Program-made: the position numbers and the translations under genes
Shown here: positions 13,410 to 17,667 of the stretch, one piece after another
How the letters are laid out: every line of letters starts with the position of its first letter
Numbering within the stretch: the stretch's first letter is position 1
Notes under the pieces: generated by a model
Database searches by the model: none
Told to the model about the DNA's origin: nothing
Seen by the model: only the letters and a program-made list of their open reading frames with translations
Assembly: GCF_000315625.1 (NCBI RefSeq)
Contig: NW_005434666.1
Coordinates: forward strand, 419,877 to 483,876
Length of the DNA stretch: 64,000 nt
Source: Guillardia theta CCMP2712
Lineage: Eukaryota > Protista > Cryptophyta
Direction of reading: 5' to 3'

Positions 13410-16400
13410 TCAGAAGATGATGTAGGAGGGCTCGATGTCCGACTGCGGTTCGTTGGCCTCCCTCCTGGGCGAGAGCGCGCCTATTCGGTTCTCCGCCTTG
13501 ACCGACACGAGGGGAGCTCGGTTGCCAATGACGATGCCGTTCCCCTCGCCCTCCTTGTGACTCTCCTCCTCCTCCCCCTTGAGCTGGTTCGACCCATGGC
13601 CAGGACTGCCGCTAGAGCTGCGCCGATCTCCGTTCGACCTCGTCAAGACCGTACCTCGCTTCCCCTTCGCCATCACCGCAGAGTTCTCTGCGACTGCGTC
13701 AGGGGTGAGGGCGAGAGGGAGGGAGAAGCATCACTGGAGAGGAGGAGCTTCAGCGCTGTCAGGGTCACCGCCTTCTCTGAGTCAGGATCGTCGACCTCCA
13801 TCAGGGCCTGGAGTGGGTGAAGTCTCAACTATTTGACAGCCGCGCCCGCAGTGAGCTCACCTTGGTGATCATCCGGTTTGTGTAGTGCTCGAGCTGCGTG
13901 GTGTGTCACTTCTCCGTTGCTCCTCGCATGCTCGCTTGCCTGTCTCTTCATGATCTTGGTGAAGCCCTCATAGTTCACAAGCTTGTCATGGGTGCACCTG
14001 AAGAGACCATGAGCAAGCAACGAAACCAAGGAGGAGGAGCAGGACAGTGAGAAGTGCTCGGTTAGAAAGTCAAAGTCATCGTATGTCAAATGAATCTTGG
14101 GTTTAGTTCCCAGCATCTGTGGCTAAGTCAAGCCCGAAACCCTGAGCTCCTCTACTGGACCTTCAAGCCCAGTTGCAGATCGTCGAAGCTAAGCGCTGGC
14201 TTCTCGTCCAGGTTCACAGCCTGGACAGCATGCGATTAGATAAAGAAAGAGCGAAACACAACAAGCAAGCATGCGTGAGAGGGAGAAGGACACGAGGAAT
14301 CAAGGAAAGGGCTCGAAAAAGCTTAAATGATTGAGTAGGACAAAATCAAAAGTGAAATGGGTGGGAAGAGGATGCTGTGATGAATTCTGCTCCCTCTCCT
14401 CTCCTCTCCTCTCCTCTCCTCTCCTCTCCTCTCTTTCACCTTGAACAACGCAAGCGTCATGTCATGCAAATGCTCTAAGCTCTCGAAGGCTGCCAGCTGT
14501 TGGGCATGGGGTGAGGAGAAAGAGACAAGGAGGGACAGGCAGGAAACCTGATCCATGATCACGTCCAGGCAGAACTCTGAAGCACTGACCACCCGTCAGC
14601 AAGATCATCGAGACCCTCCCGTTATCCCGCTCCTCTCTCCACCTGTGCATGCGAGATCCTTGCTTCTCAGCCTTCTCGTTCTTGACAATCTGAGGGGAGA
14701 TGGTCATTCGCAATTCAGAGAACCGTGTGATGAGCAAGGCGATAATCGCTCTACTTGCCTGATCCTCCTGTGCAACAGATCTGGTGAAGTTGTCGAGCAG
14801 CACGGCAACGACGACGTTCAACAAGACCATCCCCGTGATTATCTGTTGACGTGTCACTTTCACTTCCCTCCCTCCGCCCCGGTGAGAGTGACTGCGACTG
14901 ACCGAGTACGACGTAAAGAAGATCATGACCTTCCCATCGAACTCGTTCTGTCCCACCTGCTCCTAGATCAAACTCCTCCACATAGCGTCGCAATAAGTCC
15001 TCCTCGCATGCTCCCTCGCCTCTCGCCCGCTCAAACTTTCCTGCCACCTTTCCCCTCTCCCTCCTTAGCTGGTGCCTTCCTGCCACTCACATCGCATACG
15101 CCTGCCGGGTCGCCAGGTGGGTTCGGCGTGCCGACCTCCTTGCCGTTCTGGACACAAACGTAGAAGAGAGATCTTGCCAGCACTCTCAGCTCTAGCAGAT
15201 ATCAGTCGCTGCAATTTGTCACCTGGCAAGCATCGATGCCCAGCTATCCCCCGTTGCGACCTGATAATGCACAAAAACATCATGACGAGTATGTGCAAGG
15301 GGAAGGAGGAGAAGGAGGAAGGGTGAGAGAAGGAGCAAGTATGATTTTGAGCAGCAGAGAGAGAACAAAAATCTGAGCAAGCTTGAGGAAGGAAGAGAAC
15401 TGCAACAAGAGGAAGGCAGAGAAAAAGCTGTACGCAAAGGAAATTGAGGAGGAACGAGCGATACCTGATACATGGAGAACATCGACTCGTGAAGGTTCGA
15501 AAACTCTTGAGCTCGGGTCCCGTAGAGTTCAACGGCTAAGATGGCATACCTGAAAGAAGGGACTCAGTTTGAATGTGCTAGAGAGCAACCAAGGACGGGC
15601 GGAAGTCATACGAGAGGAAGGGTAATGATTATGCAATTTTGGGATAGAAAGTTCTCACATGACGATCACTACAACGAGGACAAGGACAGAGTTGAGGACA
15701 GGGATCAACGATCCGATGCTGGGTAAGAATAATCAGTAGGTTCGAGCAGTAGGAAGCAAGTCACATGGCATTGAAGAGGATCCTCAGAGACGTGAGTTTG
15801 CGGAATAATCGAACCTGAAGCAAAGCAAGAGTCGTGTGAAGAAAAGGAGAAAGAATTGAGGAGGGGAAAACTTACAGCTCGAAAGACTCGAAGAAGTCGG
15901 AGGGAGTTTATGATTGGAATATCTGTTGGTTGGATCAGACCTCTTCGTATGGTCTTTCATACACTCACTGACTGACGGGAGAAGTGCAACTATAGAGAAG
16001 GTGACAACAATCTATGCAGGTGTTAGACCTGCACGCTAAAGAAAATGGACAAGACAGATCAAGAAATCAGAGAATGGAGACAATAAACGCACAAAGTCAA
16101 AAATGTTCCATCCGTCCGTCACAAACTGCCAGAAGAAGTGGATCGCTATGTTCCACAACAACTCGAAAGCTAAGAAGGAGGTGAAAATGATGTCCATATT
16201 GCCGAAAAACTGCGAATGTTTGATCAGGCATCCAATCTTCTTGGAAGCTAGCCTATACATTATCCCAGTAGGAATTGGGCGTTGGGACCACCTGAGCGTA
16301 AAACACGGCATTGAGTGACATCAACACGAAGGGCAAACAACTCACTTGAGCCTCAGCGATATTGAGAATGAAATTGAGTGCGATGACTGAGGCCACGACA

Positions 16401-17667
16401 CCCTGAAAAGCCGCATCGTCACTTCATGATCAGATGGTCAAGTTGTTCTATGCAACATCGCATATAAACAAAGAATGTCAACAGCCTGAGATAATCTCAA
16501 GCACAGAGGAAAGTCATGGCAAGGCAGGTCAAAGGAAATCGTTCGGTTGCGTTAATTTCAATCATTGAGAGATACCTGAAACAATTTCGAATGGTACATT
16601 CTCGCCGACTTGTCTCGTATCAGTTTGAGCTGTAAGACCCATCAAAAGAGCTGAATGGTACACAAGAGATGAATACTGTCGACTTAGTCTCCCTCTCCTT
16701 CTTACTAGCAGCAGCTTTGGAGGCCTTGGTTGGAACAAGGTGTCATTATTCCTGCAAGTGAACCGGTCCATCTCTATTTCTGTACCTGACGAATGAAATT
16801 CATCCATTCTTCTGCCTTTTCCTTATTCTCTACTCTGAGCACAATGGTCCTGCCTGCATTACTTCCCTCCTCTGATGTTGTGATCCAGAAGCAGTCGTCC
16901 TCGCTGAGACCTTTGTTTCCCGATTGCCTTGTGCTTTGCCTTCCATTCGCCGCATCCACATCTGAGTTAGTCTGAACAGCAAAGTTAAAGCATTCCAGAG
17001 AAAGTCTTCTTGCATCAGGATTAAAAACATTGATACGGACAGCACCATCTCCACATACAATTTGCACGAATGAAGCACAAATGTTTCAGGAAAGGTGCAC
17101 ACGAATCTTGTGGTTCGATGGACTCACCGACATGAAAGCCAACGTGCTGGCTAACTTTGCGCCCGCAAGGGACACACTCTGATCTACCTTTAGCTAGAGA
17201 AAGCAAGTCAAGGTCATCAATAAGGCAGTCTGTCTTATCATTACTGCTGTCCTGACATTGACGATCTCATGCAGAGGGACTACATCTCGTGCCTGTCCTC
17301 AACCAATTCAACGAGATCTCATCCCATGTCAATGGCTTACGCTCTTATTTCCTTGCTTGGCAAGATAAAGATGCGTTGTTGTCACCACCAACGTCCTGGA
17401 CAAGCATCAAATCCACATAGATAAAGTGTAGAGAAACAAGAGGATGATGTACCTCTCTTGCCAGTCGTGCCTTCCACCCGAGCACAGTTTCCACACGCTT
17501 CCTGATTTCACGACATCTCCCTCAAACACCATTTCGCTGTCCTCGTCATCTTTATTGTTCAGGATGCCATGCAGGGCATTTGAAGACTCATTGGATGAAC
17601 GGGGTTGGGTTGCATACTGTTCTTGGTTCTGCACGCTGGCGAACACAATCGCTGCACGTTGAGCCAT
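13410..17667 (-). CDS. Single-repeat (6TM) voltage-gated cation channel with N-terminal PH domain and C-terminal EF-hand-like region; multi-exon, 5' end may extend further
   Basis: PH: VVKSGSVWKLCSGGRHDWQERYIIL ... CFWITTSEEGSNAGRTIVLRVENKEKAEEWMNFIRQV. S2-S3: DIIFTSFLAFELLWN...DGWNIFDF. S4: LRLLRVFRAVRLFRKLTSLR. Pore: QVATGDSWASMLAR. S6: IITGMVLLNVVVAVLLDNF. C-term: VNLDEKPALSFDDL, LTYDDFDFLTE, VNYEGFTKIMK. Confidence 0.85.

What the first reader, a model, noticed from the sequence alone, without database searches (positions are those of the whole stretch)
13410..17667. PH-domain plus single-repeat voltage-gated channel with TGDSW filter and EF-hand-like tail
Seen: an N-terminal PH domain and one 6TM repeat with a full S4 (five Arg at every third position). 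The pore motif T-G-D-S-W resembles bacterial Nav/CatSper/EukCat-type filters (T-x-E/D-x-W), not the K-channel GYG. An EF-hand-like C-terminus follows. Known: single-domain Na/Ca channels occur in algae; a fused PH domain is not part of the familiar architecture. Inference: a homotetrameric Ca/Na channel (DDDD ring) gated or localised by phosphoinositides with Ca feedback.
Basis: partly seen in the sequence, partly recalled or inferred. Interest (0 to 1): 0.7.

Follow-up and report, generated by a model that had tools for sequence, protein, structure and literature searches.

The report
PH-domain-fused single-repeat voltage-gated channel
This gene of the cryptophyte alga Guillardia theta encodes a one-repeat, bacterial-style voltage-gated cation channel with a PH domain fused in front and a decayed calcium-sensor tail; it is one ordinary member of a family of more than 50 such genes in this genome, a design I found in no paper.

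Summary
On the minus strand, 17667-13410, 26 exons join in frame into one 690-residue protein (23 GT-AG and 2 GC-AG introns). [quoted passage not shown] S4 carries R293, R296, R299, R302 and R305; the pore filter is T-G-D-S-W.

PH and channel belong together. The chain has no frame break. The model aligns end to end with a transcript-derived protein of Hemiselmis andersenii (E 8e-85). Several paralogs carry PH plus channel in one uninterrupted ORF. In this genome, 52 of 54 PH-profile loci sit just upstream of a channel-profile hit on the same strand.

The closest characterised relative is NavEh/EhEUKCATB1 of Emiliania huxleyi (EukCatB). Its Glu-to-Asp filter mutant, with the same T-G-D-S-W core, lost Na+ selectivity and passed Ca2+. 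I therefore expect a homotetrameric, depolarisation-activated Na+/Ca2+-permeable channel.

Lipid control through the PH domain is plausible but untested. Ca2+ feedback is doubtful in this copy, because its EF loop has lost most ligand positions.

No RNA evidence for this gene could be obtained. The scan has already reported this family at least eight times on other DNA of this genome.

The parts
13410..17667 (-). Whole gene: 26 exons, 690-residue protein, ATG at 17667-17665, TGA at 13412-13410
   Evidence: Exon chain assembled from coordinates. There is no frame break. All 25 acceptors are AG; 23 donors are GT and 2 are GC. An in-frame stop lies upstream at 17697-17695.
17453..17667 (-). Exon 1: N-terminal tail (a hydrophobic/small first 12 residues, then a polar stretch) and PH strand beta1 up to the start of beta2 (K60, W69, R72 completed at the splice)
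   Evidence: Matches the closest paralog on contig C4 and the W-x-x-R motif of the family.
17341..17395 (-). Exon 2: PH beta2-beta3
17245..17292 (-). Exon 3: PH beta4-beta5 (family motif D-x-(I/V)-P-L-x-E-I)
16786..16971 (-). Exon 4: long PH loop, beta6-beta7 (G146, R147) and the C-terminal PH helix (W162)
   Evidence: Pfam PH 20.9 bits. Family PH profile E 1e-12 at window 16777-16938. The acceptor at 16972 was chosen by phase and by loop length in paralogs. An open frame continues upstream to 17085, but no in-phase acceptor was found there.
16576..16724 (-). Exons 5 (16724-16677) and 6 (16629-16576): linker from the PH helix to S1
   Evidence: Both exons are phase 0 with GT-AG introns. With both included, the distance from the PH-helix Trp to S1 is 41 residues, the same as in the intron-free paralogs (39-47). 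Exon 5 rests on phase and length only.
16346..16402 (-). Exon 7: S1
16093..16239 (-). Exon 8: S1-S2 loop, S2 (E247, N251) and first half of S3 (D263, D269)
   Evidence: Pfam Ion_trans 26.6 bits. 22 paralogous matches in the same genome.
15765..16011 (-). Exons 9-11 (16011-15969, 15922-15876, 15814-15765): end of S3 and S4 with R293, R296, R299, R302, R305, K306
   Evidence: R1-R4 are invariant in 21 of 21 family proteins. Position 305 is Gly in 12 of 21. Position 306 is Arg in 21 of 21, but Lys here.
15465..15718 (-). Exons 12 (15718-15659) and 13 (15549-15465): S4-S5 linker, S5 and first pore helix
15223..15260 (-). Exon 14: selectivity filter T-G-D-S-W (15254-15240)
   Evidence: Asp at this position in 16 of 21 family proteins.
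14903..15172 (-). Exons 15 (15172-15091) and 16 (14956-14903): Pro-rich extracellular loop with two Cys (C384, C404) between filter and S6
   Evidence: 69% identical to the C4 paralog over 36 residues. It appears as an insertion relative to most of the family.
14759..14842 (-). Exon 17: S6, followed by a GC-AG intron
14440..14689 (-). Exons 18-20 (14689-14643, 14584-14548, 14496-14440): post-S6 linker and entering helix of the EF-hand-like domain
   Evidence: The exon 18/19 junction is the least certain in the model.
14161..14220 (-). Exon 21: degenerate EF-hand loop N501-D512 (14214-14179)
   Evidence: Aligned to canonical loops of the family. Positions 1, 5, 6 and 12 depart from the consensus.
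13410..14116 (-). Exons 22-26 (14116-14046, 13997-13940, 13893-13861, 13807-13735, 13693-13410): second half of the EF-hand-like domain, a conserved helical region, and a low-complexity tail
   Evidence: Junctions were chosen where short motifs match intron-free paralogs. The last about 85 residues have no homolog support.

Best explanation
This is a Guillardia theta gene for one subunit of a EukCatB/NavEh-type single-repeat voltage-gated cation channel. It carries a PH domain between a short N-terminal tail and S1, and an EF-hand-like domain after S6.

Shown here by computation:
- an intact 26-exon reading frame;
- a PH-fold N-terminal domain, shown at family level;
- a complete voltage sensor, with five in-register S4 arginines and the conserved S2/S3 acidic and polar partners;
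- an Asp at the filter's high-field-strength site;
- membership of a family of more than 50 genes with the same layout.

Inferred:
- Four subunits form the pore, as in NavEh and bacterial Nav channels.
- Depolarisation opens it.
- The ring of four Asp lets both Na+ and Ca2+ through rather than Na+ alone.
- The PH domain, tethered about 45 residues from S1 and so close to the inner leaflet, docks on anionic lipid or a partner protein. It thereby sets where the channel sits or how readily it opens.
- The C-terminal domain keeps a structural or regulatory role, but in this copy probably no longer binds Ca2+ at its first loop.
For: Gene structure:
- The exon chain has no frame break and all splice sites are consensus.
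- Every exon from PH to tail lies in the same order as in the closest paralog on contig C4.

One protein, not two:
- The model aligns over residues 26-655 with the 698-residue Hemiselmis andersenii transcript protein, E 8e-85. It aligns with 20 further family proteins at E 1e-35 to 1e-76.
- Paralogs on C1, C19, C75, C64 and others encode PH end plus channel in one uninterrupted ORF.
- Pfam finds PH + Ion_trans + EF-hand in family members.
- 52 of 54 PH-profile loci in the genome have a channel-profile hit just downstream on the same strand.

PH domain:
- The family PH profile hits only PH domains in the PDB, best E 2.2e-8.
- The AlphaFold model of a paralog's domain (mean pLDDT 81) has seven strands plus a C-terminal helix. 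It matches the Btk, TAPP1 and Slm1 PH domains.

Channel type:
- Among solved single-repeat channels, the family channel profile scores highest on 7x5v (207 bits). NaChBac and NavAb constructs score 145-167 bits.
- 7X5V is NavEh of E. huxleyi.
- EhEUKCATB1 E305D, with the same T-G-D-S-W core, became Ca2+/Ba2+-permeable.
Against:
- Neither its annotated protein nor an ortholog could be retrieved.
- The Pfam PH score of the one searchable exon is below the curated cut-off.
- The classic phosphoinositide motif is incomplete: Q70 stands where K or R is expected.
- The EF loop is degenerate.
- Ion selectivity is extrapolated from a mutant of a relative. That relative shares only about 27% identity with bacterial Nav channels, and its identity to this protein was not measured.
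- Exon 5, the exon 18/19 junction and the last exon's tail rest on phase and length only.
Confidence: 0.8

Rival explanations
1. The PH domain is not a lipid sensor. It is a protein-binding or sorting tag that sends each of the 50-plus paralogs to a different membrane or partner, and it does not affect gating.
For: Only the outer two residues of the K-Xn-(K/R)-X-R motif are kept, and they are conserved in only about two thirds of aligned family members. From general knowledge of PH domains, most do not bind phosphoinositides specifically. The very large paralog number and the highly variable beta5-beta6 loop would suit diversified targeting.
Against: The best sequence matches of the family profile are phosphoinositide-binding PH domains: PLEKHA6/7, TAPP1, Grp1/cytohesin and DAPP1. 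The short tether to S1 places the domain at the membrane surface.
Confidence: 0.3
2. This copy is a redundant, unexpressed or decaying paralog with no function of its own.
For: The family has more than 50 members, and some loci show stops inside matches. An earlier follow-up reported one copy with a broken frame. This copy has a decayed EF loop and replaces the family-invariant Arg at position 306 by Lys. No expression data were obtained.
Against: All 26 exons stay in frame with consensus splice sites. All four invariant S4 arginines, the filter, S6 and the PH core residues G146, R147 and W162 are intact. The unusual features are shared with the C4 paralog at 55-72% identity, which points to a maintained subfamily rather than decay.
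Confidence: 0.1
3. The channel is Na+-selective like NavEh/EhEUKCATB1, or is otherwise not Ca2+-permeable, despite the Asp.
For: The residues flanking the Asp (T-G before, S-W after) are those of the Na+-selective coccolithophore filter. There is no second acidic residue after the Trp: A-S stands here where EhEUKCATB1 has S-E.
Against: The single E-to-D change was enough to abolish Na+ selectivity in EhEUKCATB1. Diatom EukCatA channels with Asp at this position pass both ions.
Confidence: 0.15
4. PH exons and channel exons are two adjacent genes, joined only in my model.
For: There is no RNA evidence for this locus. 384 bases separate the last PH exon from S1. Exon 5 has no homology support.
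Against: The two linker exons join in phase and restore exactly the family's linker length. The fusion lies in one ORF in several paralogs and in transcripts of three other cryptophyte genera. No stop or alternative start sits between the two parts in the spliced frame.
Confidence: 0.03

Closest known systems
NavEh / EhEUKCATB1 of Emiliania huxleyi (EukCatB; PDB 7X5V; PMC9114117; bioRxiv 10.1101/2020.04.29.068528)
   Same: [quoted passage not shown] It is the best-scoring single-repeat solved structure for the family profile.
   Different: NavEh has Glu in the filter and is Na+-selective; this gene has Asp. NavEh has only a short N-terminal helix that plugs the gate; here a whole PH domain sits between the N-terminus and S1. 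NavEh's large extracellular loop is between S5 and the pore helix; here the extra loop is between the filter and S6. The EF loop here is degenerate.
Guillardia theta paralogs (e.g. GUITHDRAFT_114473, _98923, _109050) and the cryptophyte transcript proteins of Hemiselmis andersenii, Hanusia phi and Rhodomonas abbreviata
   Same: Same PH + 6TM + EF-hand-like layout, collinear over the whole length. Most have Asp in the filter.
   Different: 28-34% identity to the family proteins retrieved. This copy and its C4 paralog have a fifth in-register S4 arginine, a Cys/Pro-rich loop before S6 and a decayed EF loop. This copy has 26 exons, whereas several paralogs are nearly intron-free.
Diatom EukCatA channels (PtEUKCATA1, OsEUKCATA1; PMC6509283)
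   Same: Single-repeat eukaryotic voltage-gated channels. Some have Asp at the filter's position 0, and those tested pass Na+ and Ca2+.
   Different: A different clade in the published tree. They have a C-terminal coiled coil rather than an EF-hand-like domain, and no PH domain is reported.
Bacterial Nav channels (NaChBac, NavAb) and the engineered CavAb
   Same: Same fold and filter type. They are homotetramers. The family profile scores 145-167 bits on them.
   Different: Bacterial proteins of about 270 residues with no cytoplasmic PH or EF-hand-like domains. Ca2+ selectivity in CavAb needs extra acidic residues, which are absent here.

Membership tests
EukCatB / NavEh-type eukaryotic single-repeat voltage-gated channel | One S1-S6 repeat of the Ion_trans superfamily in a eukaryote of the cryptophyte/haptophyte/pelagophyte group | tested here: met
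   Ion_trans on the S2-S3 exon. Collinear alignment to family proteins with full Ion_trans hits. The organism is named Guillardia theta by the database.
EukCatB / NavEh-type eukaryotic single-repeat voltage-gated channel | Arg-rich S4 with conserved S2/S3 counter-charges | tested here: met
   R293, R296, R299, R302 and R305, plus E247, N251 and D269.
EukCatB / NavEh-type eukaryotic single-repeat voltage-gated channel | Filter T-G-E-S-W with Glu at position 0 (coccolithophore members) | tested here: not met
   Asp replaces Glu. The same holds for 16 of 21 cryptophyte-type relatives. The flanking T-G and S-W are kept.
EukCatB / NavEh-type eukaryotic single-repeat voltage-gated channel | [quoted passage not shown] | tested here: met
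   The homologous region aligns over about 130 residues with family members that have Pfam EF-hand hits. The ligand residues are decayed in this copy.
EukCatB / NavEh-type eukaryotic single-repeat voltage-gated channel | Placement inside clade B in a tree with named EukCatA, B, C, CatSper and BacNav sequences | not tested
   No named reference sequences could be fetched: the papers' supplements are not held. The only proxy is that the family profile scores NavEh above the bacterial channels. The published papers place cryptophyte single-repeat channels in clade B.
PH domain (Pfam PF00169) | Significant match to the PH profile | tested here: inconclusive
   The one exon long enough to search scores 20.9 bits against a cut-off of 25.1. 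The domain is split over four exons, and the joined model was not sent to Pfam. Family members score 26-46 bits, and the family profile hits this exon at E 1e-12.
PH domain (Pfam PF00169) | Seven-stranded beta sandwich capped by a C-terminal helix | tested here: met
   Met for the paralog P0008 residues 30-175. It is carried over to this gene by alignment, not by a model of this gene itself.
PH domain (Pfam PF00169) | Phosphoinositide-binding signature K-Xn-(K/R)-X-R in beta1-beta2 | tested here: inconclusive
   K60 and R72 are present; the middle position is Q70. Lipid binding cannot be tested with these tools.
Canonical Ca2+-binding EF-hand | 12-residue loop with ligands at positions 1, 3, 5 and 12 (D, D/N, D/S/N, E) and Gly at position 6 | tested here: not met
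   The loop reads N, D, K, D at positions 1, 3, 5 and 12, with Pro at 6. The family has D in 19/21, D in 14/21, S/N/D in 16/21, E in 14/21 and Gly in 14/21.
Bacterial Nav (BacNav) | Bacterial protein of about 270 residues with a C-terminal coiled coil and no other domains | tested here: not met
   A 690-residue eukaryotic gene with 25 introns and extra PH and EF-hand-like domains.
CatSper | Sequence kinship to sperm cation channel subunits | tested here: not met
   Only a chance-level match of the S2-S3 exon to CatSper4, E 0.19.

The most novel reading that the evidence does not exclude
Cryptophytes run a lipid-addressed excitability system. Each of more than 50 PH-tagged single-repeat channels is held at, or switched by, a particular inner-leaflet lipid state. 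In this picture the PH domain acts as a membrane-docking hinge between an N-terminal pore-plugging peptide and the voltage sensor, so that phosphoinositide levels would set inactivation or availability of Ca2+-permeable action-potential channels.
Probability: 0.15. Interest if true: 0.75.

Novelty: new variant of a known kind. Interest (0 to 1): 0.45.

Why it matters
Single-repeat eukaryotic voltage-gated channels (EukCats) are a recent discovery. They bear on how fast Na+/Ca2+ signalling evolved outside animals. A lipid-binding-type domain wired directly to the voltage sensor would be a built-in link between membrane lipid signalling and electrical excitability. Animal channels achieve that link only through loose PIP2 sites.

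The architecture is visible in database auto-annotation, but I found it in none of the papers searched. Cryptophytes have amplified it to more than 50 genes.

This particular copy adds little beyond the family. Its own points of interest are a fifth in-register gating charge, a natural T-G-D-S-W filter identical in core to a mutant already shown to pass Ca2+, and a decayed EF loop. Together these make it a natural control for Ca2+ dependence.

Tried and rejected
- **RNA evidence:** No reads could be laid.
- **PH exon against 1.8 billion representatives:** only low-complexity or repeat junk came back.
- **PH exon in the search for homologous proteins:** no candidate, because the length window excludes full-length kin.
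- **Wrong frame:** one own-genome search used the wrong reading frame for S6 and is void.
- **Mixed alignment:** I aligned one full-length relative with all exons given by reference, hoping to pull out this gene's annotated protein or its Hanusia ortholog. MAFFT scattered the fragments and the profile found nothing.
- **Supplements:** those of the two EukCat papers are not held.
- **Cluster look-up:** it gave no haptophyte names.
- **S2-S3 exon alone against the PDB:** too short to discriminate.
- I redid it with coordinates only.
- **Rejected splice alternatives:**
  - extending exon 4 upstream to 17085, because no in-phase acceptor exists;
  - a possible extra 17-codon exon near 17180-17130, which has no homology and makes the loop too long;
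  - reading 14116-13940 without an intron, because the paralog has a stop there and the spliced form restores an L-C motif.
- **Joined model:** the joined 690-residue model was not sent to any search or folding tool. It was built only inside scripts, from window coordinates, for the frame check and for local alignment to proteins already fetched.
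Full report
**What is there**

The window belongs to a genome of 87.1 Mb in 669 contigs. The protein database names that genome's proteins as Guillardia theta CCMP2712.

The finding lies on the minus strand. Stop-to-stop frames and the sequence itself show many short coding pieces separated by short introns. I fixed exon ends by three criteria:
- reading phase;
- consensus splice sites;
- comparison with the closest paralog on contig C4, with intron-free paralogs and with family proteins.

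The resulting chain has 26 exons from the ATG at 17667 to the TGA at 13410 and gives 690 residues without a frame break. It has 23 GT-AG and 2 GC-AG introns of 41 to 273 bases. An in-frame stop lies just upstream of the ATG.

**Handling of the spliced model**

The joined protein was never sent to a search or folding tool. It exists only inside scripts built from coordinates, for the frame check and for local alignment to proteins already fetched.

**Domains**

- **Exon-level Pfam.** The last PH exon scores 20.9 bits (E 5.5e-4) on PH, below the curated 25.1. The S2-S3 exon scores 26.6 bits on Ion_trans.
- **Alignment to relatives.** The model lines up, in order, as follows:
  - a PH domain (residues about 50-167);
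  - a 41-residue stretch from the PH-helix Trp to S1;
  - S1 to S6;
  - a conserved C-terminal domain of about 130 residues;
  - a low-complexity tail.
- **S4.** It reads R293, R296, R299, R302, R305, K306.
  - The first four Arg are invariant in 21 of 21 relatives.
  - Position 305 is Gly in 12 of 21.
  - Position 306 is Arg in all 21, but Lys here.
  - The 'five Arg at every third position' is therefore real. It is a trait of this copy and its C4 paralog rather than of the family.
- **Filter.** It is T-G-D-S-W at 15254-15240. Asp stands at that site in 16 of 21 relatives.

**Are PH and channel one gene?**

The case rests on four lines.
1. The PH exons join to S1 through two phase-0 exons. 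These restore exactly the linker length seen in intron-free paralogs.
2. Paralogs on C1, C19, C75, C64, C97, C63 and C4 carry the end of the PH domain and S1 to S5 or S6 in a single uninterrupted ORF. The C1 gene is one 984-codon ORF with PH, EF-hand and Ion_trans hits.
3. The model aligns over residues 26-655 with a 698-residue transcript-derived protein of Hemiselmis andersenii, E 8e-85. UniProt names that protein 'PH domain-containing protein'. Hanusia phi and Rhodomonas abbreviata transcripts have the same layout.
4. A profile of the family's PH regions finds 54 loci in this genome. By eye, 52 of them lie within about 1.6 kb upstream of a channel-profile hit on the same strand, this locus included.

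**Is the N-terminal domain truly a PH domain?**

- The family profile matches only PH domains among solved structures: PLEKHA6, TAPP1, PLEKHA7, Grp1 and others, best E 2.2e-8.
- An AlphaFold model of the paralog P0008 residues 30-175 has mean pLDDT 81, with the core above 90. It shows seven strands and a C-terminal helix.
- Its fold matches are all PH domains.
- This gene keeps the core residues G146, R147 and W162.
- Of the phosphoinositide motif it keeps K60 and R72, but it has Q70 where the middle basic residue should be.

**What kind of channel?**

The family channel profile scores far above threshold on animal four-repeat Cav and Nav channels, summed over their four repeats. Among single-repeat solved channels it scores highest on 7x5v (207 bits). 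NaChBac and NavAb constructs follow at 145-167 bits.

7X5V is NavEh of Emiliania huxleyi. [quoted passage not shown] It is the same protein family that Helliwell and colleagues call EukCatB, a clade that in their trees includes cryptophyte sequences.

Their EhEUKCATB1 has the filter TGESWSE and is Na+-selective. Its E305D mutant, TGDSWSE, passes Ca2+ and Ba2+. This gene carries that Asp naturally. The best reading is therefore a homotetrameric, depolarisation-activated channel permeable to both Na+ and Ca2+. This is inference by analogy, not measurement.

**The tail**

Most relatives have a canonical first EF loop: D in 19/21 at position 1, S/N/D in 16/21 at position 5, G in 14/21 at position 6 and E in 14/21 at position 12. 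Here the loop has N, K, P and D at those four positions. The C4 paralog is similar. The domain is homologous to an EF-hand pair, but Ca2+ binding at this loop is unlikely.

**Novelty**

The two EukCat papers do not mention a PH domain. Full-text searches for pleckstrin or PH domain together with EukCat, or with cryptophyte voltage-gated channels, found nothing. Databases already carry the automatic PH label.

The scan itself has reported this family at least eight times on other pieces of this genome, with the same conclusions. I read those notes only after reaching my own conclusions.

I rate the family as a new variant of a known kind, and this locus as an ordinary, intact member of it.

**Uncertain parts of the model**

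- Exon 5 rests on phase and length only.
- The exon 18/19 junction is the least certain.
- The acceptor of exon 4 is a choice, because an open frame runs further upstream.
- The last about 85 residues have no homolog support.

Noticed in passing
L015:2207-5158 (G000 contig C1, GUITHDRAFT_98923): In this intron-free paralog a canonical EF-hand pair (Pfam EF-hand_7, residues 108-169) is inserted inside the PH domain, between its N-terminal strands and its last strands and helix. It is a split PH domain carrying a Ca2+ sensor.
   Followed up: partly
P0009, P0016, P0018 (Logan and JGI assemblies): These relatives match the single-repeat model twice along their length. They look like tandem two-repeat versions of this channel type.
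   Followed up: no
P0030, P0034, P0035: More distant relatives carry SAM domains (PF00536, PF07647) plus EF-hands with the same channel core. This is a second kind of cytoplasmic add-on in the wider family.
   Followed up: no
G000 contigs C140 (about 21-39 kb), C292, C166, C53, C47: PH-channel genes occur in local clusters: three on C140 within 18 kb, several on the short contig C292, and an inverted pair on C53. This points to recent tandem duplication. Some matches carry internal stops, which may be introns or broken copies.
   Followed up: no
window 14385-14435, minus strand: The intron after exon 20 begins with a run of GGAGA-type pentanucleotide repeats.
   Followed up: no
window 14758-14757 and 13939-13938, minus strand: Two of the 25 introns use GC-AG with the donor context G-C-A-A-G. 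Eleven introns are 50 bases or shorter.
   Followed up: partly
window 17667-17630, minus strand; P0011 residues 1-14: The first dozen residues are small and hydrophobic. In the Hemiselmis relative a similar start is followed by K-R-R-R, which recalls the published NavEh N-helix (a hydrophobic turn plus an Arg cluster) that plugs the open gate. This copy lacks the basic cluster.
   Followed up: no
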